From: Dimorphilus gyrociliatus
Lineage: Eukaryota; Animalia; Annelida
Reading direction: 5' to 3'
Length of the DNA stretch: 64,000 bases
Assembly (NCBI GenBank): GCA_904063045.1
Contig: CAJFCJ010000018.1
Location: 744,001-808,000, forward strand
The notes beneath the pieces were generated by a model, which worked only from the letters and a program-made list of their open reading frames with translations, was not told where the DNA came from and searched no databases. This document shows, piece after piece, positions 18,301-64,000 of this stretch (its first letter is position 1; every line of letters begins with the position of its first letter). A program made the position numbers and the translations under genes.

Positions 18301-18678
18301 ATCGAATCTTCAAGTCTGAATGAAGAATTTGGCTATTTCACTATTTCAACCGTTTATTTAAGCGAAGGGCTGCGATTTTAATACATATTATTATTTATTG
18401 ACAGTATGTTGGTACTCCATGGAACCATACCAGTATTTTGGCCTTAAAAAATTCTTGAAAAATCGAATTTTCGATATAATATTTCTAAAAAAATTATAGC
18501 ATTATGTAATGATTTTCTCGATAAAGTTATTGTAAATACGAAAACTTCACTCAATGTCAAGGTTGCACATGAGCGGACTCACAGATTAAAGGTGAAGAAT
18601 TATCGTTTTTACTCTGAATCGTGTCTATTCATTTGTTAGTTGAAGTCATAAATAGAAAACAAAAAAATAGGAAAAAGG

Positions 18679-46724: not shown

Positions 46725-49700
46725 TTAGATCAGTCTTTCTTCGGGGGGAGGTTTCAGTACATTATTCATATCAACTCTTGAACCATTAACTTCCTGTTTT
46801 GAAGGGCTATACACGCCTCTGTCTGCTCTTTTCTTACGTGCAATCAGGATCAATATAATAGTCACTGTTAAAAATGAGAAAAACAATTTTTAATATATGT
46901 ATGGTATGCTCAAATCAATACAGTTTTATTTACTATATTTAATACAGACTTTTTAATATGAGATTAATTTACTACTAGGTCGTTAAATATATAAAACAAT
47001 AAAAAAAGCATGATTACCAATTAATAGTATAAGGCACAAAACACCAAAAACTGATCCCAATATTATAGAAATTTTAGGACCATCAGATTTCTGTAGGTAA
47101 ACGTAAGTGTTAATTTTAACTAATATTAACAACTGTTAGCAAAAATTTCAAGGTTTGAACATATGAAGCAAGGAATTCTGAATAATACATGTTAGCACGA
47201 TAGTAAAGCTAGTCTTCTAGTAAAATAGTAAAACATACTGTTTCTTTCCAAAAAGAAACAATTTAAACTCATAAAATATATAAAAATCATACATAGTGCA
47301 ATCAGGCATAGTAGAATAGAAACGACCGACAAGCCTGCGATTAGGCCAACATTTTCATCGGTCGCCTTGGTTGAAACCTCTCGAAGCTGTGCAAGAATTT
47401 TTATAAAATAGATACTTTTTTTTAACTGAAAAACCTTTATGATATTGAAATTAATATCTTAACATAATTAATTTAATATCTAATCTGGACGATAGTTTTG
47501 CTGTTATATTTTTGAGATATTGGGCAATAAGGATAATATTTAATCTACTCACCTTAGTTTGGCATTTATTTCCTTCCCAGCCTGATAAGATAAAGAATTA
47601 TTTTAGTTCTTCTGCTATTTAATCAATAATCTCTGTTCCTTATAAATATATAAATACCTTCAAAACAATTGCATTTAGGAATGGCATCAACAGGTGTACA
47701 GTTTCCATTTCCATTACAATTTTCATCAGCGCAAGGATTCCGTATTTGGCATTTAGGTCCCATATAATCAGCAGTACAGGTACAATTATAACTTCCTATT
47801 ATGTTGCTACATGTTCCTCCATTACTGCAAAACCCACTAGTAAGACATTCATTTACATCTCTAGTGCAATTCTTTCCCATGTAACCAGTTGCAGTACAGT
47901 TACATGTATACTCGTTCAAACCGTCAATACATGTCCCTCCATTTTGACAGGGATTTATTAAGCATTCGTCAATATTTTCGTCGCAGTTTGTGGATGTCCA
48001 TCCTGCAGCGCAATTACATTTATAAGAACCTATTGAATTCACACAAGTCGCTCCATTTTTGCAGATTTCATTCTTGCATTCATCAACATCCTCAGTACAG
48101 TTAACTCCTTGATAAAACTGAGTGCATTGGCAAGAATAGTTACCAGGAAGATTCGTACATGTTCCTGAATTTTCACAAGGGTTTTGTTCGCATTCATTAA
48201 TATCCTCGTCACAATTGAAGCCTTTCCATCCTTCACGACATGAACATTCATAGGCGTTCACTAAGTTATTGCACTTTGCACCATTTTTACATGGATTCGT
48301 TTCACATTCGTCTATATCTTCGTCGCAAAGAGCTGATGTAAATCCAGGAAAGCAGTTGCACGTATAATTGAATGTAGTTTTGTCATTCTCACACGTTCCG
48401 TTCTTACATGGATTGTTATATTTGAGACAATAATCAATTTCCTGATCGCAGTGACGGCCTTCGAAACCATTAGCACATTCACACTTCCATTGAAAGAAAT
48501 CAGTTAATGTCGATGTACAAGTAGATCCATTTCGACATATATCAACTGTATTGCAGTCACTTTTCGGTGAATACTGGCACCTATGGCCAGTTACATTCTC
48601 ATTCGGGCATGTACAATTGAAACCTAGAAGTAGATCGGTGCAAGTTCCATTATTGAGGCAGGCCTTCTCATTCGTATTATTTTTATACAATTCGCAATAG
48701 TCAATGTCATTTTCACACCTGAATTTTGTTAAAAAACAAAACAAAATAAGTAGACATGTTATATCCACAGCCCTTCTAATTGTCATATTTTCAATTTAGA
48801 GTCTAATTGATTGTCATAACAACGAAACCGACACATTTTCATTAACTAAGAGGATCAGAATCTAAATAATCAATTGCCATACCAAAGGCTACTGATAAGG
48901 TAGAGAAAAATTACTAGTTGAAACAGTTCTGTTTTGCGATATACGAACTCTGTTATCGATTAATGTTATAAAGAAAATTACCGATCGATGATATAGGCTA
49001 AAAAAATCTACGCGTATATGAATCATCAGTGCAACGTGAAAAAACTATAGTATCACATTTAGCTGTTTCTAAAAGGGAATAAAATATCAGTATTTTTTTT
49101 TTTTACAAAAAGTAGAATCTCTTATGAGTGAAGTATTTTAGTAACAGAATTTTTTCCTTAATTACTTTTTAGGATAATTAGCCTATTGATATCCTGAAAA
49201 TTTACAACTGCTTTCTTTCATTTAATGTTGATATTAAGGACTCGTATTGTTTTTTTATGGCTAAATATATTTGGATAATAGTGTGTAAAGGTGCTTACCT
49301 CTTTCCAGTATATCCTGGAGAGCAAGTACATTGAAAATTTCCTGGAAGATTTAAACAAGTTGCTCCGTTCTCACAGATATTTGAATTACATTCGTTTTTA
49401 TCTTTCGAACAATTCTGTCCCTCCCAACCATTCTCACATGAGCAGCTATACTGATAAAAATTATCTGAACATTTTCCATAAACGCATGGGGATGGACTAC
49501 ACATATTTGGAGGATTGCAACCCATACTTATTGCTGATGAATCAGCTAATTTATACAGGGAACTTAATCCAGGTTGATTTTGGATCCATGATAATAACTC
49601 ATCGCCTAAATATAATTGACCCATACAGCCTTGATAATTCTCGCCAACAACTATTTCAGCTTCGTCTTTGGCAAGATTATTGAGTATTGTTTCATTTTTG

Positions 49701-52700
49701 ATTCTATCGCAAACTTCTCCTTCATAAGTTATTCCATTATCGCTAAATGTAAGTTTAATTTCTCTCCATTCACCGTCCAATAGAGAACTTTTAAAAGCGC
49801 ACTGAGCGGATTGATAAATTAGAATAATTTCTTCTAAGTTTACCCTTAACTGAAATTCTGTTTGACTGTTAGTCATTTTAAAAAGAGTTGATGGAGTTCG
49901 ACTTCGAAATTCAATTTGTAGAGTATTTTTTAGTTGCGCAAATTGTCTTTGAGTATCATACTTAAAAATCACAGATTTCTCAAGAGTTGTATTAGCTACA
50001 CAATAAAATCCTCCAGAAGATGGCCTGTTTTGGCAAGCAGTATCTGGAATATCTTTACAAGGGTCTTCAAAACAAAAATCATTGATGTTGCAGATTTTTC
50101 CTGTCCAATCTCTTTTGCATGTACAATGGTAGTCATCATAGAATATATTTGTACAATTTAATGTGTTAGTTGAATTGCAAACATTTTGGTCACATTTGTC
50201 TGCTGTTACTTCGCCATATTCAATTTGTCCACTTGAGGTTTCCGGGATGAAAGAGTCATTGAAAAATTTTTGTAATAATGGAGAATCATGAAGTAGAAGT
50301 AGCTTTTCGTTTAGGCGGATATCTTGAATGCTAACTTTGGATTGTGGCCTTATTTTAATCAAGATATTGCTTAATACTCTTCGAGAAATATCTACAGTTG
50401 TAAAGTAACTGTCCACTTTAACATTTAACTTTCCATTGTCGCTTATTGCTATAGTTATGAAATGACTCTTTCCATCTGCAAAGTCTCTTGAAATTAAGCC
50501 TTTCTCATTGAAATTAAGAATTGAACGATTCATATAAAAATTATAATTAAATTGACTTATCTCCAAAGTTATTAGATCTAAGTTTGTTGATCTTGTCCGA
50601 AAATAAAATGAGATTTCTAAGTTTGAAGCCTTAAAATTATCAATACGATATTGAATGGATGTACTATCATAAAAAGTCAGAGCTGATACTTCAAATTCGC
50701 AGTTTCTTCCAACAAAAGGTCTATTACAAATGCATTGAAAGTCAAACCATAAATCCTGACATAAACCTCTACCCAAACACGTATCATTTCTGCATTGAAC
50801 TTTCCGTGGACAAGTTTGAGCACCCTGAGGAGCCTCTATGTATTTCTTTACTCTTTCTGCTTTTTCACTAGGGTAAATATAAACACCACTCATACAACCA
50901 ACGAAGCATTCCGTTGGACATTCCCATGCTCCACCAAAAGTCATATCATTCATTTCAACATTTTTGCTAGGAAAATGTTCCGTTGTTGTTATATTTACTC
51001 CATCAGTTATCAATTGTAGTTCTAAAAAGGACGGTCTAATTTCAAAGGAAATAAAATTTTCTACGCCGTTTGCAATATTTTTGTTGGCATCAATAGAAAT
51101 TGTGACTTCGCCCAATTTTCCAACTAATGAGTAAGAATCATTTAAAAGGAGATTAACTGACAATCCGGATGATAGTGCACCAAATAATGTTCGACCAGTT
51201 ATGGTAGTGCGAAACCAGAATTCTATTTTTACTCCAGAAGCAGGTATTCCCGTTGGTTTTCCTCTACCCTCTGTCCTCCAGGCTGATTCACCATCAAACG
51301 ATACAACAGCTGAACGTTCGCAAATTTGACCAGTTGTTTCCTTGTTACAGTCGCAGTCAAAGGAATCATCAATTCCGCCTCTAAAAGAAGGTAAACATAT
51401 GCCAGATCCGCAGGGATTCCCATTTTTGCATCCAATAAGTTCAGTTGAGCAATTCTTGTCACCAAAATACATATTTAGCTTATTTGGATATGGACAATGG
51501 CAAGTGTAATCGTTTATGCCATCCTCACAAGTTCCGCCGTTCAGACACGGTTCATAGAGTAGGCATTCATTAATATTTTCTTCACAATATCTTCCAGTAA
51601 AACCACTTTTACAAACGCATTCGTAACCGTTTACCTTGTCTACACAAAGACCATTTTCGGAACACATATGATTTATACAGTCGTTGATTTCTTCTTTACA
51701 GAGTGTCCCTGTAAAGCCAGGAAGACAGGAACACGAGAAACCAGCTCGTTCATCTGGTGGACTTTCGGGTGATTTTTGTTGGCATATGGCTTTGTTGAAG
51801 CAGGGATTGCTTTGGCATTCGTCTACATCAATTTCACAGTTCTTTCCATTAAAACCAATTTTGCAAATGCATTTATAATTATTGATTTCATTGATACATT
51901 GTCCCTCATTTTGACAGGGGTTACTCTTGCAATTATCGATTAGCTTTTCGCAATTTTCCCCCTCGTAACCAGTTCCAGAACAATTGCATTCATACCTGTA
52001 CAAAAGAACAAAAAAAAAAAAATATAGTATATTTCGATTAATCTATAAGGATTAAAGCGATGAGAAAAAAATTGAATCTAGGAACAAGACAGATCATCTC
52101 TCGATAATAGATCCGCTTTAATCATGTATTAAAATGGTAACTAATCCCCTAGAAATGTATTCTCAAATAGCTATGACACGTGCATTTAATATGTTATCGA
52201 ATTTCACTCCATTTCTCTATCTCCTTTAGTACGCTATCAAAAATGTTTTTAGGTTGTTTAATCTTAATAATCTATAAAAGCATATATCTTACACATTAAC
52301 ATTTTTTTGTTGCCTTAAAGGAGAAACGAGAAACTTACAAGATTAACAAAAAAACATATTCCTAAACCTCACTAAACGATTATTATCAATATAACAAAAG
52401 CGTTTATTTTAGATGTTATTGCATGTTAAACTTGTTATATCGTTTACCTAGTCCTATTGGTAGTCCGGGTTAAATTCGTTTCTAAAGTTCTGTAAAAAGA
52501 AGGGTTTGAAGCTGGATGTGAAATTTAACATGCAGAGAAAATTGATTTATTTCGAAGGATAGAAATTGCGCAGCATTAGACCAAGTTATTCACAAGATTT
52601 TATATATAACTTACTTGTTAATTAAATTTTTGCAGGTACCATTTAAACAAGGTGATGATGAACATTCATCTATTTCGGAATTGCATAGTCTTCCTGTATA

Positions 52701-55496: not shown

Positions 55497-58157
55497 CTAT
55501 TGTTTTTTCATTTTTTTCTTTTTCATAGGTTCTTTTTTACCGTTCATTTCCTTTCTCTTTCTCTTTTCTGGTTTTCGATTTTCAGTGACTTTCTTTTCAG
55601 TCTCATTATCCACTTTTTTTTCTTTAGCTTCGTTCTTAATGATTTTTTTATTACCGTTCTTTCCTGTCTTATTTAATTTCTTCATTTTTCTCTTTCCTGG
55701 TTTTTCAGTGACTTTCTTTTCAGTCTCACTATTCATTTCATCAGTTTCTTCTTTATCTTCATCCTTTACATTTTTATTATTGTTCTTCTCTTCATTACTT
55801 AATTTCTTGAACTTTGCAACAAAGAATCCGTCAAGGTTATTTCGGTGAGGATAGATGCGTCTAGTTAACTTCATGCTAGGCGTGAAACGATGTTGCTTGA
55901 ATTTCTCGAATCCCTCCTCTCCTATCGTCAATCCGGTGTTAACTAATTTTACATGTCTCATTTTTAGGGCATAATCCACAACCCATTCATTTTCCTCTAC
56001 AAGAACTGAGCAAGTTGAATAGACAACATAACCCCCTGTTTTAGACTTAGCATCTACGCAGTCGATAGCTCGTAGAATTAACTCTTTTTGAATATGTGAA
56101 CACCTGAGAAAATAACAAGATATTTAAAATATTATTCTTTATTAATTAAGTTATTCTATAAACCTTTGAATGTCTTTTTCATCCTTATTAGTTTTAGCCG
56201 AAGTATCTTTAGACACAACTCCTGTTCCACTGCAAGGTGCGTCTAAAAGGGCTCTATCAAAAGCGTGGAATATTTTATGCAGTTGACGACCATCGTAATT
56301 ACAGACAACAGTATTAGTTACTCCCATACGATGAATATTAGCAATAAGAGCTTTGCATCGATCTTTGTTGGCATCATTTGCCATAACTAAACCCGTATTA
56401 CGCATTAATTGAGCTGTAAAAATCCCAATATATCAATAGGAATCTTCAAAATATTATAACCAACCTATGTAAGTTGTTTTTCCTCCTGGTGCAGCTGCCA
56501 TATCTAACACTCGTTCATTCTCTTGAGGAGCAAGAGCCATAACTGGCAGTAAACTTGCTCCTCCTTGTAGCATATAATGACCACCTAAATACTCAGGAGT
56601 AGCTCCTATAGGAACGGAAGAGTCAAATATAACTAAACCAACTTTAGACCACTTTCCAATAGGATCTAAGTTAACCCCACGATTAATTAGAGCTTGAGCT
56701 AAATCTCTTCTCCTTGTTTTTAAAGTATTAGTACGAATCGTCACGGGTCGTTCAACTTCGTTAGCTTCCATGAATTCAATAATCTGTTATAATAAAAATA
56801 TTTTGAATATTTTAAACAGATAAGCACAACTTTCGTATTAAACCTCATGAGGAAGAAGTTCATAGAATTTTCCAGCAAGATATTCATTGTAACTATAATA
56901 GAATGCTAAATCTTGTATAAGCTGATCTATGTAATCCCCTCTTGATTTTCCCTCCTCTTTCCTCTCTTTAAAGTTATCCAAAACTCCCAAAATATCTTTT
57001 ATTCTCTGCTTCACTATTGTTAGATCAGGAGATTCTTTTTGTAAGCATTATTAAGGAATAATTATTCAATGTTCTCTAAATAATATACAGAAAAGTTTCA
57101 AAAAAATTCTTTATCTTAAACACTTTTAAAGGATATCTTTTTCAATTTCCTGGCCACTCGGTAAAACAATTTTCTCTGTTGTTGCAATATTAGTTTGTAA
57201 TTCCATTTCTGCATCTTCATCATCCTGCTCTTGCTGCTTTGCAAGTTTTCGGGCGGCTTTTTCTATTGGTAGTTCACTTTCTGAAGCATCCGAATTAATA
57301 TCGAATTCATCATCGACCTAAAAAAACGAATACTACTATTAAAAGATGAGTTTTGGTGCAACAAATACTTACGTCGTCGCTGTCAAGTGAAATATCACTA
57401 TCCATATTTGCCTCGTCAAATTCATCATCCGGTAGATCTGGCGCTTCAGAAAGTTCATCTTCCTCACTCTCCTGAACTAAAATGACAATTAAAAAGTTGG
57501 TATTTTGATATGTTTTGCAATTAATTTCTTAGAGAAGATAAAAAATTAGTCATACTTTTTGGTTTCTTCTTTTCCTTTTTTTTATTTGAATTCTTCAATT
57601 TTTTCTTAGTTTTTGTGAAGGATTTTAAAGGAGCAGGTATGTCATCATCTCCATCTATGCAAATAAAAGTTATTTATTTACTTTGTACTTTATTTGACAA
57701 ATTTTTCTTGATGTTTACTATAATTTTTCTAATTCAACAATTTTGAGAAAAATATTTAGCAACTAAATTAACTCATAATTGCAACTTAAATAAAATAATT
57801 AATCAAGTTTTTCATACGGTCCATGAGATCTTAGGGGATTTAAAGGCAGAAGCAATTTTTTTAGAAAAAAGGGTTTAAAAAAGTTTTACCTGAATTATCA
57901 TCGTCAGGGAATAGCTTCTGAACTATCTTTTTGGATTCAGGTTTTCCTTGCTTTTTCTTAAGCACTTTTTTGCCTCTTCTTTTACTAGCATCTTTCTCGC
58001 CAGGTTCTGAATTGCCATGCTTTTTAAATATAAGTATGTTTCGTTGCTAATCTCTCTTACCTAGTAAATGTCTTGGAATGGTAGGATCTGGTTGCTTCCT
58101 AGCTTTTCTTCCTGGACCAGATTTTGGCCTGTCGGCAAGACTTTTTTTTCTGCCCAT
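55497..58157 (-). CDS. NOP2: NOP2/NSUN1 28S rRNA m5C methyltransferase
   Basis: MGRKK...[67 protein letters not shown]. Confidence 0.97.
57041..57136 (-). other. U12-type (minor spliceosome) AT-AC intron, 96 nt
   Basis: 5' site G|ATATCCTTT, branch site TTCCTTAAT (57058-57050), 3' end ...GCTTAC|. Removing it gives the in-frame [20 protein letters not shown]. Confidence 0.95.
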
Positions 58158-58364
58158 TGATCGTTTAGAGTTCTCAGTAGTCACGTTTTTTTATGGAGCG
58201 ATAATATGTGACTAAAGGACTATTTTATTATTTTCGTATGAATACATATTTACATATATTTATTATTAAAGATTAAAGTTACCACTCTTTATAATTTAAT
58301 TTTTTTTTGGAAATATTATAGCAGCATTAGGTTAGTATTTTTTTTACCTTATTTTGAAAACCGC

Positions 58365-58377
58365 ATTTCCTCTTCCG
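58365..58377 (-). promoter_or_regulatory. Tandem GGAA motif CGGAAGAGGAAAT in the NOP2/septin divergent promoter
   Basis: Same 6-nt GGAA spacing as the motifs at 6371, 11465 and 16151. Confidence 0.45.
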
Positions 58378-58446
58378 CTTTCGAATAAAGACCGACAAAC
58401 GAAAATTTTGATTAGCATAAACTGAGGTTTCACCTAAGTTTTCGGA

Positions 58447-59620
58447 ATGGATGATAAAATCATAAATTCTGATGAACCTGGCATGGTTGGATTTGGCGGC
58501 TTGCCTAACCAAATACAGAGAACTTTATATAAAAAAGGATTTGATTTTACACTAATGGTTGTTGGACAATCGGGGCTTGGTAAATCGACGCTAATTAATA
58601 CTCTTTTTCTCACCGACCTGCCAGCTAAGAAGAAAGGAAATCAAAAATTAAAAATCGAAAGTTCTACTGTGGAGATTGAAGAGAGGGGCGTGAAATTGCG
58701 ATTAAGCGTAGTAGACACTGTCGGATTCGGAGATTCCATCAACAATCAAGAAGGGTTTCAGCCTATTATTAAATACATCGACGATCAATTTGAAAAATAC
58801 TTAAGAGATGAATCTGGTCTTAACCGACGCAATATTCACGATTCAAGAGTGCATTGCCTTCTTTATTTTATTGACCCAAGCGGTCACTGTTTGAAACCTA
58901 TTGATATCCAATTTCTTAAAGAAGTTCATAATAGAGTAAATGTTATTCCTATTATCCCGAAAGCTGATATGCTTACAATAAACGAACGACAAACGATGAA
59001 GAAAATGATCAGACAACAACTCATTGAGAATAAGATTTCCATTTATGATCTACCACCCTGTGAGCCAGATGATGATGATAGCTACAAGAAATTATGCAAA
59101 CGCATAAAGGATGCTGTCCCATTTGCCGTAATAGCATCTATGGATAAGGTACCTATTGCTAGTGCTGCAGGAAAAGGAACAGGATTGGTAAGAGGAAGAA
59201 CTTACCCTTGGGGAACCGTTCTAGTTGACGACGAAAAACATTCAGATTTTGTAATACTAAAAAAGCTAATAATGTATGCAGGTCACAAAAATGGTCATCA
59301 AATTCTAATAACATTTCTCATTTAATAGAACTCATCTTCAAGATCTTCAAGATGTTACTCATACAGTACACTACGAAAATTATCGATCGAAAAAACTGAG
59401 TAATGACCCCAAGAGAGCTATGGCATCATCAGCTAGCGGCTTGTCACAAAAGGAAAGAGACTTGTTACTGAAGGAACAGGAAGTAAGAGAAAGCATACTT
59501 AATATGATACGAATTGTTTTAATTCAATTTATATATTTATAGCTTGAACAAATGAAGAGAAAATTGCAAGAAGAGCAAGAAATGTTAAGGAAACAAAGAG
59601 AAGGGTTTAGAGCAAAGTAA
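58447..59620 (+). CDS. Septin, SEPT2-group-like, 3 exons
   Basis: GFDFTLMVVGQSGLGKS, EERGVKLRL, RGRTYPWG, THLQDLQDVTH, and a C-terminal coiled coil. Confidence 0.93.
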
Positions 59621-60022
59621 AATTTGTTTGATAAATGGAATGTATTTCCAAGTTGTATTTAGTAAACTGATCTGCGCTTCTTTAGTGTTATTCTTTTTAT
59701 TTTATAAGAGTATCTTTTTACTAAATCATGTTTAATGTGTTCACAACTACTTGATTTGACAAAAAGAACACGGTGGCTAAACTTTAAAAGATATCGAATT
59801 ATATTTTTTTTACTCTATTTGTTTTTGTGCTTTTTTTTTGCATACAAGTTAGTCGACAGAATCTGAAAAGTATGAATTTGATACGATATAAATTTTCATT
59901 CAAAATAAAATTAAAAAAGTAATGATTTTGATTTTTTTAATTTATATTTTCACTTCAACCCCTTTACATAGACAATCATATTCACTAACAAATGCATTAT
60001 CCATTATAAATTAGTTATTTCT

Positions 60023-60574
60023 CTAAGTCTCCTGACCTCCGGTTTGTGACAAGTGTCGAACAATATCAACCCAATCGTGCCCTCTTGGAAGTTCTCCTGT
60101 CGTCGAAAGTTTATTATACATTCTTCTTTTTTGAGATTTCGTCAATTGCTCTTTTTTTATTTTGACGTTTTTTGTTTGAATTTCAGTGGGAACGTTCTCT
60201 TCTTTATTTTCCGTAGAACTAGGTATAATATCAGGAATTAATTCATCAATATTTTGTTGTACATGATCAAAAAGAACGAAAGTCATAGGCGATCCCAAGT
60301 AATGTTCTATTTCATTTTCTATTTTTTGCTTTATATGCGATTTGCATTCAGAACTTAAGAAATTATTGTAAAATAAATCCAAATTAATAAGAGGACCTTC
60401 ATCAGGATAGTTTTTAGTCCATTCAATCTGTACCAAAAGGGTCTTTTTTTCATTTATGGTGGAAGTCACCTTACATTGGAATGTAGTATCATTTATAACT
60501 TTAAAATTCTCATCATCATCATACATTGCTTTAATCGCCTCCCTCTCATCGGATTGTTGTTCTTCGATACTCAT
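60023..60574 (-). CDS. RWDD4: RWD domain-containing protein 4, intronless
   Basis: True start is MSIEEQQSDEREAIKAMY at 60574; the ORF track over-extends it. YPDEGP, KEQLTKSQKRR, GELPRGHDWVDIVRHLSQTG. Confidence 0.92.
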   Translation of the reverse strand: MSIEEQQSDEREAIKAMYDDDENFKVINDTTFQCKVTSTINEKKTLLVQIEWTKNYPDEGPLINLDLFYNNFLSSECKSHIKQKIENEIEHYLGSPMTFVLFDHVQQNIDELIPDIIPSSTENKEENVPTEIQTKNVKIKKEQLTKSQKRRMYNKLSTTGELPRGHDWVDIVRHLSQTGGQET

Positions 60575-61010
60575 TCTTCCAACCGATGAGTTTGATTTGG
60601 TCACGTTTCTCTGAGCGATAAACACCCAATCTGAAAGGAAAACTGTTCTAATTCTGAAAGACGTCCAAAGAGTGGTGTTGTTTTTCAAATGAAAGAATGT
60701 CGTTCATTGATAATTTTCCTATATTTCACGAAGTTTTTTTACAGTCATACTTCTATATTAATTTGTATGCCTGTAACTTGTTTTAATTCAGTAAGAACTT
60801 TAAGTTAGATATCTGAACTGGATATATTATATAAAAGATACGAATATGGAAATAGTTTTATTAAGCTTGATTAGTTCATAAAGATAAGCAATTAAGCTGT
60901 TTTTAATATAATACATTCGGTAAATGCACACCTTCTGGCACTTGCCAATCAAAGAATTGTCATTAACATAGTGCAATAAACAAACACACAAATATTCCTA
61001 AAGTTTTCAT

Positions 61011-64000
61011 TTAAGTTTGTAGCAATAAGGCAACACCTCCCAATGTCCATTTTCCAGGTTTTTCCTTAGTTTTCAGATTAAACGTCCAAACGAAAGTTGG
61101 ACCTCTTTGCTTTGTTTTATATACGGGACATTCGTACATATTTCTCAAATCTTGTCTATCAACGGGTATAGCCTTAATAAACATAACTGGCATTGGGGGA
61201 GCTAATTCTTTTAGTCTTGCTTCTTGGATCATGCCTGTCTGCATATCCCATCTTGCTCCTTCCATAAATAATCCATGAACGTATGCGCCTTCTCTTGGTG
61301 GTCCTCCCATATCTTCTCTTGTTTTCTTTGTTACATCACACTGTAGGCACATCCTATCTAGTGGCCATTCGTTCTTACGAGCCATCTGTTGCATAATGGC
61401 TGTGAGGAAAGACTGAGGATTGAAGAAGCCTCCCAGCCAAACTGCAGCCGGAAGTTGGAAATCAGAGACCCAGGTTTCTAGCTCCTTTACTCTTTGAAGG
61501 AGATCAGCATACCATACTGTTAGACCATAGAGAGATGGATAGGCTTTCCTTGACCAACTTTCTGGAACATTATCTAAGAAAAGAGCATTTCCAAGTTCTT
61601 CCATATCTGAGGTAATTGTCAACTCTCCCTTTAAGCCGAGATCTAATTCTTTAAGACTTCTCTTTATTTCGTTGGTCAATGTATTCATTCGTTCACATTC
61701 CTGGAAAGCGACTACAACATACGGAGTTCTTTCATCTGGTGGTACTTTACCCATAATTTCATGCATGTTAAACTCATCCGGTAGTTTTTCGACAATTTCG
61801 TCAAGAGATTGTTTAATTTTTTCTTCCCTGGATACTCCTGCACCTCCTGAAGCTCCTGCGTCTCTTGGTTGCATCTCAAAGACAGTTTTGAATAAATTAT
61901 CGGATGTTGTGTTGAGAAATTCGATTTCAGCATTTGGATGTAATCCGTACAAGTAGGGACTTTCTGGAGGTAAAACTTCGTCAATAAAGCTATGATATCC
62001 CTTGTAATCTGAATTTGGCGGAATTGGGAAACCGGGAGCAAGATAGAGCTCTCCATCTAACATGTCAGGGTGCATGTATGTTTCCAGATATGTTTTACAT
62101 AATCTCCTGTCCCAATCGTCTGTGATATGTCCACCGTACATAATCTCTCCAAAAAGATATCTTAAATCTTCCCACGGAACTTTAGTGTTAGCTTCCAAAT
62201 AGTTGTATAAAACGTTTACTGAAATTGTAAGATCTCCAGTGTTGTATGGATACACTCTATTCCATCCTTGAGGACCAAACTTTCTCCTTTCACAAACGAC
62301 AGCGTGGAAGTAGCAAAGGGCGAAAAGGATGGCTTTAAATTCTGCTTCTCTCGCGCACATTTCCAGTGTGTCTTGATTGAAGTTATCAAACGCCTTGTGT
62401 AGATTGGCGAACATTCCAGTGGGAGGTTCATTTGTAATTTTTATAGCAGACTCTAGGATTCCTTGAGGAATTATGTGAGCATCTTTAGTGGCAGCTGGCT
62501 CAGCAGAAATATATACTCTGTAGTTGGCATGAGAGCTTGCACCCAGCTCTTCTAATTTCTTTTCTAATGTTGGGAGCCATTTAGCAACAAGATGGACGTT
62601 CTGAAGGATAACCCAATGTCCCTCTTTAGCTCCTTCATCCATTGCTTGCTGAGCAACTATTTCTTGACCTTGACCGAGTGAAATATTGTGGAAATTTTTC
62701 TGGTCACTTGTGAAACCCAATTTTTTGCCAAGTGCTTCTACATCCTTTAGGGGATCTACACCAGGAGAAAGAATAAAGAATACTGGAGTGGCTGGATCGG
62801 TTTCTTCGTAACTCTTAGCAAAAGGTACACTTTTGCCTTCAGTATATTTCGCACCCATCTTCTCCTCAATGAAATAAGTTATCGCATATGTCATACGATC
62901 AGGGCGCAAAGCTCTCATCATGCACAATTTTTGAAGTGCATTCTTGTTTTTCCATTCTTGTGGTAGTTTTTCTTTCTCTGGACATTCACTTTCAACAAAC
63001 TTTTTCCATCTTTTAGCTGATCCTTCAATATCTCTGTCTAGATTTCTAAACTCGTCCATATTTGATAAAGCTTTGATACCTCCCCATGATAGATGAGACA
63101 AGAAGTCAACCGGTGAAGTTACATTTGGTACTGCAGGGAATCTTAATAAAAAGTCTAATTCAATAGGATTTATATCTTTCGTCATTAGCAAAATTTGGAA
63201 AGTCATTTGAGCTAAAAATATAAGTTTATCTTTCTCAAAAAGTCCTCTACTTGTGTAAACAGATACTGCAAAAGTAATTGTATCAATGAGGTTTGCTACT
63301 CGCTGTTTTACTTCATCAGAAGACTCTGCTCTATCAATGGCTTTTTCAAAAACTGTTCCAAAGGCCTTCAAAGAGAATTGATACATTGGAGAAATCTTAT
63401 TTAGATCATTCAAAATGAAGTATAAGAGCGAAGCTCTTGCAGCCGCCGGTCTATACATTTCCCTGGCTGTATTGATTTCAACTTCAGTTATCTTAGCTTG
63501 TTGAACTTGAGCTTCTATTTCAGTAGCTGTTCTCTTAGTAGTTTCTAAGTTTTCCACCAATTCATAATCACCCAAGAAGTTTCCTTCTGCTGTTGATAAT
63601 TTAGCCAGAAGTGAATCTTCGAGGCGTTTGAGCGTAATTTTAAATTCATTTTGCTGTCTTGTGAGATCTGATTTTGTTTTTTCTAGATCAGGACGTTCCT
63701 TACTAACTACAGCAGCCAACAGTTGATCTTCTAATCCATCTCTTGTAACGGTAAAATTGATGAGTGTTGTTTGAGCCTGCATTTCTGGCTTGTAATGAGG
63801 ATTAGCTAATTTAGTATGTAAGATCAGTTTAAATGAGGGATTATATTCCACTTCCTTATCTCCCATTTTTATGGCTCTTCCTTTTTTAATAGTATTTCTT
63901 CCCAATAGAGGGTCAAGTACGGGATCCACATTTTCGCCAATATTTTCTATTAACACTACCTCACCGGCTGAAACAGCTTGTTCTATGACGTCCAGATAAC
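61011..64000 (-). CDS. Axonemal outer-arm dynein beta-type heavy chain (DNAH9/DNAH17-like), 3' part
   Basis: AAA5-AAA6 and C-terminal domain: [63 protein letters not shown]. The frame stays open to the window edge. Confidence 0.95.

What the first reader, a model, noticed from the sequence alone, without database searches (positions are those of the whole stretch)
47018..47386. Crumbs has two alternative transmembrane exons that look mutually exclusive
Seen: the 29-nt exon 47581-47553 ([10 protein letters not shown]) ends in phase 0. Two exons follow, each with canonical sites, each phase 0 to phase 1. Exon A, 47386-47293, encodes [31 protein letters not shown]. Exon B, 47090-47018, encodes [24 protein letters not shown]. 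Either one joins the last exon in frame to give a ~27-residue TM helix and the intact ERLI tail. Including both creates T|AA, a stop exactly at the junction. Skipping both shifts the frame. The shared LCLI core suggests exon duplication. Known: Dscam uses mutually exclusive TM exons to set subcellular targeting; I know of no such switch in crumbs. Inference: a new isoform switch that changes the juxtamembrane stalk and TM of the apical determinant, which could affect trafficking, shedding or cilia/photoreceptor targeting. A tail-less A+B form is also possible.
Basis: partly seen in the sequence, partly recalled or inferred. Interest (0 to 1): 0.85.

Follow-up and report, generated by a model that had tools for sequence, protein, structure and literature searches.

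The report
Two alternative transmembrane exons in crumbs
The crumbs polarity gene of the tiny annelid Dimorphilus gyrociliatus has an unannotated second exon for the outer half of its membrane-spanning helix. A related worm keeps this exon under protein-level selection, so the gene very probably makes two versions of Crumbs that differ only in stalk and membrane helix, though no transcript has yet been seen.

Summary
The window is Dimorphilus gyrociliatus, and the minus-strand gene is crumbs (DgyrCDS11193, 1538 aa). The annotated protein uses exon B (47090-47018); exon A (47386-47293) is unannotated.

**Sequence logic.** Both exons have AG/GT sites and run from phase 0 to phase 1. Either one alone joins the ERLI tail exon to give a 27-28 residue helix. 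Including both gives a stop at the junction, and skipping both gives a stop at once.

**Conservation.** A syntenic locus from a related, unidentified species (about 57% protein identity in the large exon) keeps both exons:
- The lengths, phases, splice sites and junction stop are identical, while the introns are essentially unalignable.
- Exon A evolves as coding sequence (dN/dS 0.21, dS 1.25).
- Exon B is unusually conserved even at silent sites (dS 0.19).

**Chance.** Across the whole window, only one other site on either strand passes the same filter, so chance is unlikely.

**Other animals.** Lingula, Dreissena and Tubulanus have a single exon at this position. At least two further unidentified invertebrate lineages have two or three tandem, phase-matched, selected copies.

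**Missing evidence.** I found no transcript containing exon A, and function is untested. The closest analogues are Dscam exon 17 and the Drosophila crb EGF-region exclusive exons. I found no report of a transmembrane switch in crumbs. The scan flagged similar transmembrane exon pairs in other genes of this genome; I did not test those.

The parts
47553..47581 (-). 29-nt micro-exon (end of the last EGF repeat, [10 protein letters not shown]), ending in phase 0
   Evidence: It is present in annotated protein P0001. The orthologous 29-nt exon lies at L001:14238-14266.
47293..47386 (-). Exon A: unannotated alternative exon, 94 nt, phase 0 to 1. It encodes a 12-residue stalk plus the outer 19 residues of the TM helix (GLxxGLS type).
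   Evidence: - Canonical AG/GT sites; 47% GC against 22-26% in the flanking introns.
- The orthologue L001:14431-14524 has the same length, phase and splice sites.
- dN/dS is 0.21 at dS 1.25. Synonymous changes are in excess (16 of 31, binomial p 0.005). Differences by codon position are 9/5/17.
- The proposed frame is one of only two of the six frames (the other is on the opposite strand) that are open in both species.
- It is absent from P0001.
47018..47090 (-). Exon B: annotated alternative exon, 73 nt, phase 0 to 1. It encodes a 6-residue stalk plus the outer 18 residues of the TM helix (canonical IIGxxxG type).
   Evidence: - Used in DgyrCDS11193 (P0001).
- The orthologue is L001:14711-14783, 89% identical in DNA, with dS 0.19.
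- It resembles the single exon of Lingula (z 4.6-6.3).
47091..47142 (-). Conserved intronic stretch just upstream of exon B, containing two CTAAC-like branch-point motifs
   Evidence: It is 75% identical to L001, against about 52% for the rest of the three introns. Its function is not established.
46725..46864 (-). Last coding exon: two bases that complete the split codon, the inner 8 residues of the TM helix, the 37-residue Crumbs tail ending in ERLI, and the stop at 46727-46725
   Evidence: The tail matches the Drosophila Crumbs tail in PDB 4wsi/4yl8, E 7.7e-12. dN/dS against L001 is 0.04.
47656..52006 (-). The two large upstream crumbs exons (EGF and laminin-G ectodomain)
   Evidence: Pfam EGF, hEGF, EGF_CA and Laminin_G_2 hits. 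tblastn of P0001 residues 203-1459 gives 99.7-100% identity.

Best explanation
Exons A and B are a tandem pair of homologous, alternatively used exons of Dimorphilus gyrociliatus crumbs. Each encodes the extracellular juxtamembrane stalk and the outer two thirds of the single transmembrane helix.

Productive mRNAs carry exactly one of them, joined to the constant tail exon. The results are two full-length Crumbs proteins with the same ectodomain and the same FERM/PDZ-binding tail. They differ in stalk length (12 against 6 residues) and in the helix face:
- B carries the canonical IIGxxxG motif.
- A carries a GLxxGLS motif.

Exclusivity is most likely enforced by reading frame. Including both places a stop at the A/B junction, 73 nt upstream of the last exon junction. 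That transcript would be a likely target of nonsense-mediated decay, or would give a tail-less product. Skipping both gives an immediate stop.

Shown: the anatomy, the conservation and selection on both exons, and the use of B in the annotated protein.

Inferred: that A is spliced directly to the tail exon, that the A+B form is degraded, and that the two helices differ in partners, trafficking or processing.
For: - **Anatomy and frames:**
- **Gene identity:** Pfam EGF/LamG hits; the tail matches Drosophila Crumbs; 100% match to DgyrCDS11193, which uses B.
- **Orthologous locus:** the syntenic locus L001 keeps ex0, A, B and the tail exon with the same lengths (29, 94, 73 nt), phases and AG/GT sites, and the same T|AA stop. 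The introns are about 52% identical with indels.
- **Selection on A:** dS 1.25, dN 0.27, ratio 0.21; excess of synonymous changes p 0.005.
- **Chance:** only one chance candidate elsewhere in 128 kb.
- **Homology:** A aligns with B (z 3.0-3.5).
- **Helices:** both composite helices are 27-28 residues with mean hydropathy 2.7-3.1.
- **Ancestral state:** one exon of this kind followed by the same mid-helix phase-1 intron in Lingula, Dreissena and Tubulanus.
- **Independent support:** in unidentified invertebrate contigs L060, L066 and L074, two tandem exons (94 nt, and 91, 91 or 82 nt, all 1 mod 3) both show dN/dS of 0.12-0.42. The downstream exon is in frame only if the upstream one is skipped. 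L006 and L024 show two or three such exons. A-type exons (A, A', E2) and B-type exons (B, B', E1, Lingula) score well within each type (z 3.7-7.4) and poorly across types between lineages (z <= 2.6).
Against: - I could not retrieve any transcript, EST or protein record containing exon A. The only D. gyrociliatus protein found uses B. The search aimed at short transcript fragments returned nothing, probably for technical reasons.
- Because A is the upstream exon, selection on its frame would also be satisfied if A were always followed by B, giving a truncated protein.
- No enforcing mechanism beyond frame was found. The A-B intron is 202 nt, too long for steric exclusion. All sites are GT-AG. 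No conserved docking/selector pairing was seen.
- The order of exon types is reversed relative to the other lineages, so one-to-one orthology of the pairs is uncertain.
Confidence: 0.75

Rival explanations
1. Exon A is a cassette exon that is included upstream of B and never used alone. The A+B mRNA stops at the junction. It then either acts as a regulated unproductive (decay-targeted) isoform, or yields a tail-less Crumbs ectodomain. That product would end in a 19-residue hydrophobic segment preceded by small polar residues, which could act as a short anchor or a GPI-attachment-like signal.
For: - The stop lies exactly at the A/B junction and is kept in both species.
- A is upstream, so it is read in frame whatever follows it.
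- Selection on A's residues is compatible with a translated truncated product.
Against: - A has the same phase and nearly the same hydrophobic length as B, and joins the tail exon to give a normal 28-residue helix.
- A-type exons in other lineages lie downstream of the canonical exon. They are in frame only when used alone, yet they are under purifying selection.
- A pure decay switch would not need conserved residues along the whole exon.
Confidence: 0.13
2. Exon A is a non-functional remnant of an exon duplication, or a chance open frame, that is never spliced into mRNA. The annotated B-only model is then the whole story.
For: - The genome annotation has only B.
- No transcript evidence for A was found here.
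Against: - A is kept at dS > 1 with no indel, the same AG and GT positions, dN/dS of 0.21 and a third-position bias.
- Its GC content is 47% against 22-26% in the introns.
- The chance rate of such frames is about one per 128 kb.
Confidence: 0.05
3. The conservation of exon A or B reflects an RNA-level or DNA-level element, such as a splicing-regulatory structure or an enhancer, rather than alternative protein sequence.
For: - Exon B and the 52 nt upstream of it are far more conserved than silent sites elsewhere.
- The same local fold is predicted in both species.
Against: - The fold is not more stable than shuffled sequence (z -1.5 and -0.1).
- B is certainly coding.
- A shows the opposite pattern, with saturated silent sites and conserved residues.
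- At most, this adds a regulatory layer on top of B. It does not replace the coding reading.
Confidence: 0.07

Closest known systems
Dscam1 exon 17 cluster (17.1/17.2) of insects
   Same: Two tandem, homologous, mutually exclusive exons encode the transmembrane segment of a single-pass cell-surface protein, while the rest of the protein is unchanged (PMC1397879).
   Different: - It is an unrelated gene and protein family.
- Dscam exon 17 encodes the whole TM segment, whereas here only the stalk and the outer part of the helix vary and the inner 8 residues are constant.
- The effect of Dscam's TM choice on dendrite versus axon targeting is from my own knowledge, and nothing comparable is tested here.
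Drosophila crumbs exons 4 and 5 (Crb_C isoform)
   Same: It is the same gene family. These are predicted mutually exclusive internal exons that produce stage- and tissue-specific Crumbs isoforms (PMC5312091).
   Different: - Those exons encode extracellular EGF-like sequence, not the membrane helix.
- According to that paper they are conserved only within Drosophila species.
- They have no positional relation to the exons described here.
Single juxtamembrane/TM-half exon of crumbs in Lingula anatina, Dreissena polymorpha and Tubulanus polymorphus
   Same: The exon sits at the same position, has the same phase (0 to 1), and is followed by the same mid-helix phase-1 intron 8 residues before the basic stop-transfer motif. 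Exon B resembles it in sequence.
   Different: These three genomes show only one such exon between the last EGF exon and the tail exon by my filter. The isoforms annotated for Dreissena and Tubulanus in the clusters I read do not differ in the TM region.
Vertebrate CRB3A/CRB3B and CRB1 isoforms
   Same: Alternative splicing at the 3' end of a crumbs gene changes the membrane-proximal or cytoplasmic part. This rests on my own knowledge and was not checked here.
   Different: Those isoforms change the cytoplasmic tail (ERLI against CLPI) or remove the anchor. Here the tail is constant and only the stalk and helix change.

Membership tests
Crumbs family | Large ectodomain of EGF-like repeats interspersed with laminin-G domains | tested here: met
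   Pfam EGF, hEGF, EGF_CA and Laminin_G_2 hits on the upstream exons. The nearest named relatives are crumbs homologues.
Crumbs family | Single TM helix followed by a short tail with a FERM-binding motif and a C-terminal ERLI PDZ-binding motif | tested here: met
   The tail exon aligns to the Drosophila Crumbs tail from PDB 4wsi/4yl8, E 7.7e-12, and ends in EERLI. The GTY of the FERM motif is GVY here.
Mutually exclusive exon pair | Adjacent internal exons, each with its own canonical acceptor and donor | tested here: met
   Both exons have AG/GT sites and are separated by a 202-nt intron. The sites are conserved in L001.
Mutually exclusive exon pair | Same splice phase and similar length, so that either exon fits the same neighbours | tested here: met
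   Both run from phase 0 to 1. They are 94 and 73 nt, each 1 mod 3, and both read through to ERLI.
Mutually exclusive exon pair | Sequence homology between the alternatives (origin by tandem exon duplication) | tested here: met
   A aligns with B at local z 3.0 (5 of 400 shuffles reach the score), and A' with B at 3.5 (0 of 400). The pattern K..D..I..I.G.SV is shared. The signal is modest because the sequences are short and hydrophobic.
Mutually exclusive exon pair | Mature mRNAs contain one or the other exon, never both or neither | not testable with these tools
   Only the B form is on record (P0001). No read data were reachable. The frame logic makes the both and neither forms non-productive.
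Mutually exclusive exon pair | A known enforcing mechanism: steric hindrance, U2/U12 incompatibility, competing RNA pairing, or frame plus decay | tested here: inconclusive
   - Steric hindrance is excluded, because the intron is 202 nt.
- U12 sites are absent; all sites are GT-AG and the donors are gtatga and gtaatc.
- No conserved docking/selector duplex was found.
- Frame incompatibility is present and conserved.
- Decay itself was not tested.
Dscam exon 17-type TM switch | Homology to Dscam | tested here: not met
   The gene is crumbs. The resemblance is functional and architectural only.

The most novel reading that the evidence does not exclude
Crumbs carries an old, two-type switch of its membrane helix that predates the dinophilids and is shared by several lophotrochozoan lineages. 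One type is the canonical IIGxxxG/A helix, also found as the only form in brachiopod, bivalve and nemertean. The other is a GLxxGLS helix, found as exon A in two dinophilids and as the second tandem exon in at least two other unidentified worm-like lineages. On this reading, the helix of this apical determinant is a regulated interaction surface that selects different membrane partners or trafficking routes, rather than a passive anchor.
Probability: 0.3. Interest if true: 0.8.

Novelty: new variant of a known kind. Interest (0 to 1): 0.62.

Why it matters
Crumbs is a central determinant of apical membrane identity, and its human homologues are retinal-disease genes. Work on it has focused on the ectodomain and the 37-residue tail, with the membrane helix treated as an anchor.

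A conserved, selected alternative exon that changes only the stalk and the helix would imply that this segment carries regulated information. Candidate roles are partner choice within the membrane, sorting, or susceptibility to cleavage.

It would also provide a natural pair of isoforms to test this in a small, tractable annelid.

More practically, the reference annotation of D. gyrociliatus misses a conserved coding exon. The same tandem arrangement can be found in other invertebrate crumbs loci by a simple phase-and-hydrophobicity scan.

Tried and rejected
1. **Transcript evidence for exon A.** A word-indexed search with the C-terminal 99 residues of P0001 found only P0001 for this species. 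An alignment-based search meant to catch short transcript fragments containing A or B returned nothing at E <= 10, not even known crumbs tails. I take that as a profile or length artefact, not as evidence of absence.
2. **Third dinophilid-like species.** A third relative (P0003, run ERR14224706) could not be read, because no DNA was returned.
3. **Competing RNA pairing.**
   - Inverted repeats in the AT-rich introns are numerous and not conserved.
   - Duplex energies between exon B, or its upstream element, and the other segments are within about 1.5 sd of shuffles in at least one species for every pairing.
   - The local fold around exon B is the same in both species but not unusually stable.
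4. **Isoforms in other phyla.** Records for Mizuhopecten, Haliotis, Gordionus, Tubulanus, Dreissena, Diadema and a millipede all have identical TM regions within each cluster.
5. **Other loci with a mid-helix intron.** L011-L015 have too little upstream sequence. L007-L010 have a repetitive, doubtful candidate.
6. **Naming the source organisms.** Literature searches on run and contig accessions did not identify L001, L006 or the metagenome contigs. They showed only that ERR14224706 is cited in a coral microbiome study.
7. **Alternative boundaries of exon A.** The longer exon A ending at donor 47269 is rejected, because the equivalent extension hits a stop in L001.

Full report
**Observation.**
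- A 29-nt micro-exon (47581-47553) ends in phase 0.
- Exon A (47386-47293, 94 nt) and exon B (47090-47018, 73 nt) each have an AG acceptor with a pyrimidine-rich run and a GT donor. Each is open and runs from phase 0 to phase 1.
- The last exon starts at 46864 and ends with ...EERLI and a stop at 46727-46725.
- Joining ex0 to A or to B, and then to the last exon, reads through to ERLI. A+B gives T|AA at the junction. Skipping both makes TGA the first codon.
- Exon A is 47% GC, exon B 29%, and the three introns 20-26%.

**Chance.** I applied a mechanical filter for such exons: AG...GT, length 1 mod 3, open frame, uncharged hydrophobic last 14 residues. Over both strands of the whole window it returns four donor sites. 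Three belong to A and B, and only one lies elsewhere. A chance frame between ex0 and the tail exon is therefore unlikely.

**Gene and organism.**
- The upstream open stretches carry EGF, calcium-binding EGF and laminin-G domains.
- The 45 residues of the last exon align to the Drosophila Crumbs tail crystallised with PALS1 and Moesin (4wsi, 4yl8; E 7.7e-12).
- The large exon is 100% identical to DgyrCDS11193 of Dimorphilus gyrociliatus, 1538 aa.
- That protein's C-terminus contains ex0, then exon B, then the tail. B is therefore the annotated exon and A is unannotated.

**Orthologous locus.**
- The next best hits were two unnamed proteins from public read-run assemblies, 57-59% identical.
- One lies on a 61.7-kb genomic contig with the same neighbours: dynein heavy chain, an RWD protein, a NOP2-type methyltransferase, then crumbs (L001). 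Identical contigs come from sister runs.
- Its 3' end has the same 29-nt ex0, a 94-nt exon A', a 73-nt exon B' and the tail exon. The sites, phases and T|AA at the A'/B' junction are all the same.

**Conservation and selection in that comparison.**
- In the pairwise alignment the three introns are 51-57% identical with many gaps, close to what two AT-rich sequences give. Exon A is 67% identical, exon B 89% and the tail exon 81%, all without a gap.
- Nei-Gojobori counts:

| Exon | dS | dN | dN/dS |
|---|---|---|---|
| A | 1.25 | 0.27 | 0.21 |
| Tail | 1.33 | 0.05 | 0.04 |
| B | 0.19 | 0.10 | 0.51 |

- In exon A, 16 of 31 changes are synonymous where 28% would be expected (p 0.005). Changes fall 9/5/17 on the three codon positions.
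- The proposed frame is one of two of the six frames that are open in both species, for A and for B alike; the other lies on the opposite strand.
- A is therefore a protein-coding exon under purifying selection, not a decaying copy.

**Homology and ancestry.**
- A and B align to each other over stalk and helix.
- A profile of the region, searched against 1.8 billion representative proteins, found 288 crumbs C-termini.
- Many short genomic open frames among these hits start in an intron 8 residues before the basic stop-transfer motif. This shows that a mid-helix intron is widespread.
- In Lingula, Dreissena and Tubulanus, the gene has one exon for the stalk plus the outer helix, phase 0 to 1. 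The same phase-1 intron follows, and then the tail exon. I found no second candidate.
- Exon B resembles this single exon (z 4.6-6.3 against Lingula), whereas A does not resemble it consistently (z 0.7 for A, 3.3 for A'). B is therefore the canonical type and A a diverged paralogue.

**The same arrangement elsewhere.**
- L006, a read-run contig from an unidentified animal, has a 106-nt exon and an 85-nt exon between the last EGF exon and the tail exon. Both run from phase 0 to 1 and both have canonical sites.
  - The first scores with B (z 7.4) and the second with A (z 5.0). The cross pairs score at z 1.5 or below.
- L024, a related metagenome contig, has two clear exons of this kind and one doubtful one.
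- L060, L066 and L074 are metagenome contigs from three related unidentified animals. Each has a 94-nt exon, then a 71-102 nt intron, then a second exon of 91, 91 or 82 nt.
  - Both exons have dN/dS of 0.12-0.42 at dS 0.35-1.6.
  - Length changes are in multiples of three.
  - Joining the two exons runs into a stop.
  - The downstream exon is in frame only when the upstream one is skipped. Its selection is therefore direct evidence that single inclusion happens in that lineage.
- I could not name these organisms. From memory, the JGI contig series look like host reads in gutless-oligochaete symbiont metagenomes, but this is unverified.

**Mechanism.**
- Steric exclusion is not available in D. 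gyrociliatus, because the A-B intron is 202 nt.
- All sites are U2-type GT-AG.
- I found no conserved docking/selector pairing.
- What remains is frame. A+B stops at the junction, 73 nt before the last exon junction. The skip form stops at once (TGA here; Leu then TAA in L001).
- The likely scheme is free or regulated choice of one exon, with removal or truncation of the other combinations. This is inferred, not shown.
- The two composite helices are 28 and 27 residues long, with mean hydropathy of about 3.
- They differ in the register of their small-residue motifs. B-type exons have IIGxxxG/A, as the single exon in Lingula, Dreissena and Tubulanus does. A-type exons have GLxxGLS. The stalk is 12 residues in A and 6 in B.
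- From general knowledge of helix packing motifs, this could change association within the membrane. Nothing here tests that.

**What is unexplained.**
- Exon B has frozen silent sites (Fisher p 0.001 against the other exons). The 52 nt upstream of it are 75% conserved.
  - A stem between the acceptor region and the donor, plus an internal hairpin, is predicted in both species. It is no more stable than shuffled sequence.
  - Dense splicing-regulatory signals on the regulated exon are a plausible reading.
- The order of types is A then B in dinophilids but canonical-first in the other lineages. The pairs may therefore not be strictly orthologous.

**What is known.**
- Drosophila crb has predicted mutually exclusive exons 4 and 5, but these encode EGF-like sequence and are restricted to Drosophila species (PMC5312091).
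- Dscam exon 17, with two variants, corresponds to the TM domain (PMC1397879).
- Full-text searches found no report of alternative TM exons in crumbs.
- First-stage notes of this scan flag similar TM exon pairs in TMX3 and vinculin of the same genome. I did not test them.

**Verdict.**
- The core interpretation is well supported by comparative evidence: two real alternative exons for the stalk and outer helix, of which only one can be used productively.
- It lacks transcript proof for exon A.
- I rate it a new variant of a known kind of splicing switch, of moderate to high interest.

Noticed in passing
window 47018-47142 (minus strand): Exon B and the 52 nt of intron upstream of it are far more conserved in DNA than silent sites elsewhere in the gene (dS 0.19 against 1.0-1.3; upstream element 75% against about 52% for the introns). 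A fold that pairs the acceptor region with the donor is predicted in both species, but it is not unusually stable.
   Followed up: partly
L006:1174-2108; L024:1941-2836; L060:211-494; L066:536-791; L074:492-769: Other unidentified invertebrate crumbs loci carry two or three tandem phase 0-to-1 exons for the outer TM half. In these lineages the canonical type comes first, the reverse of the dinophilid order.
   Followed up: partly
L016:48707-48782; L097 donor at 84569; L098 donor at 18540: Lingula, Dreissena and Tubulanus share with Dimorphilus a phase-1 intron inside the crumbs TM helix, 8 residues before the basic motif. The split helix is therefore old, at least within Lophotrochozoa. Many arthropod-like hits encode the helix and tail in one exon.
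   Followed up: partly
L055, L070, L081, L086, L088 versus L057-L061, L066, L074, L077: The metagenome-derived worm contigs hold two crumbs paralogues with different tails, one ending ...IDFESTLKVPPEERLI and one ending ...[16 protein letters not shown]. The first has two outer-helix exons. For the second, only one (A-like) exon was found in the sequence available.
   Followed up: no
window 46864 and L001:14923: Skipping both exons gives a stop within the first two codons of the tail exon in both species. That would encode a secreted, anchor-less ectodomain. It may be coincidence in AT-rich sequence.
   Followed up: no
window 55500-64000 and L001:1-6800: Gene order upstream of crumbs (dynein heavy chain, an RWD-domain protein, a NOP2-type methyltransferase) is kept between D. 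gyrociliatus and the L001 species, despite about 57% protein identity in crumbs.
   Followed up: no
(tool behaviour): An alignment query made of one long and several short rows returned no hit at E <= 10, although the same region found hundreds of crumbs tails in the representative search. A blank from that kind of query should not be read as absence.
   Followed up: no
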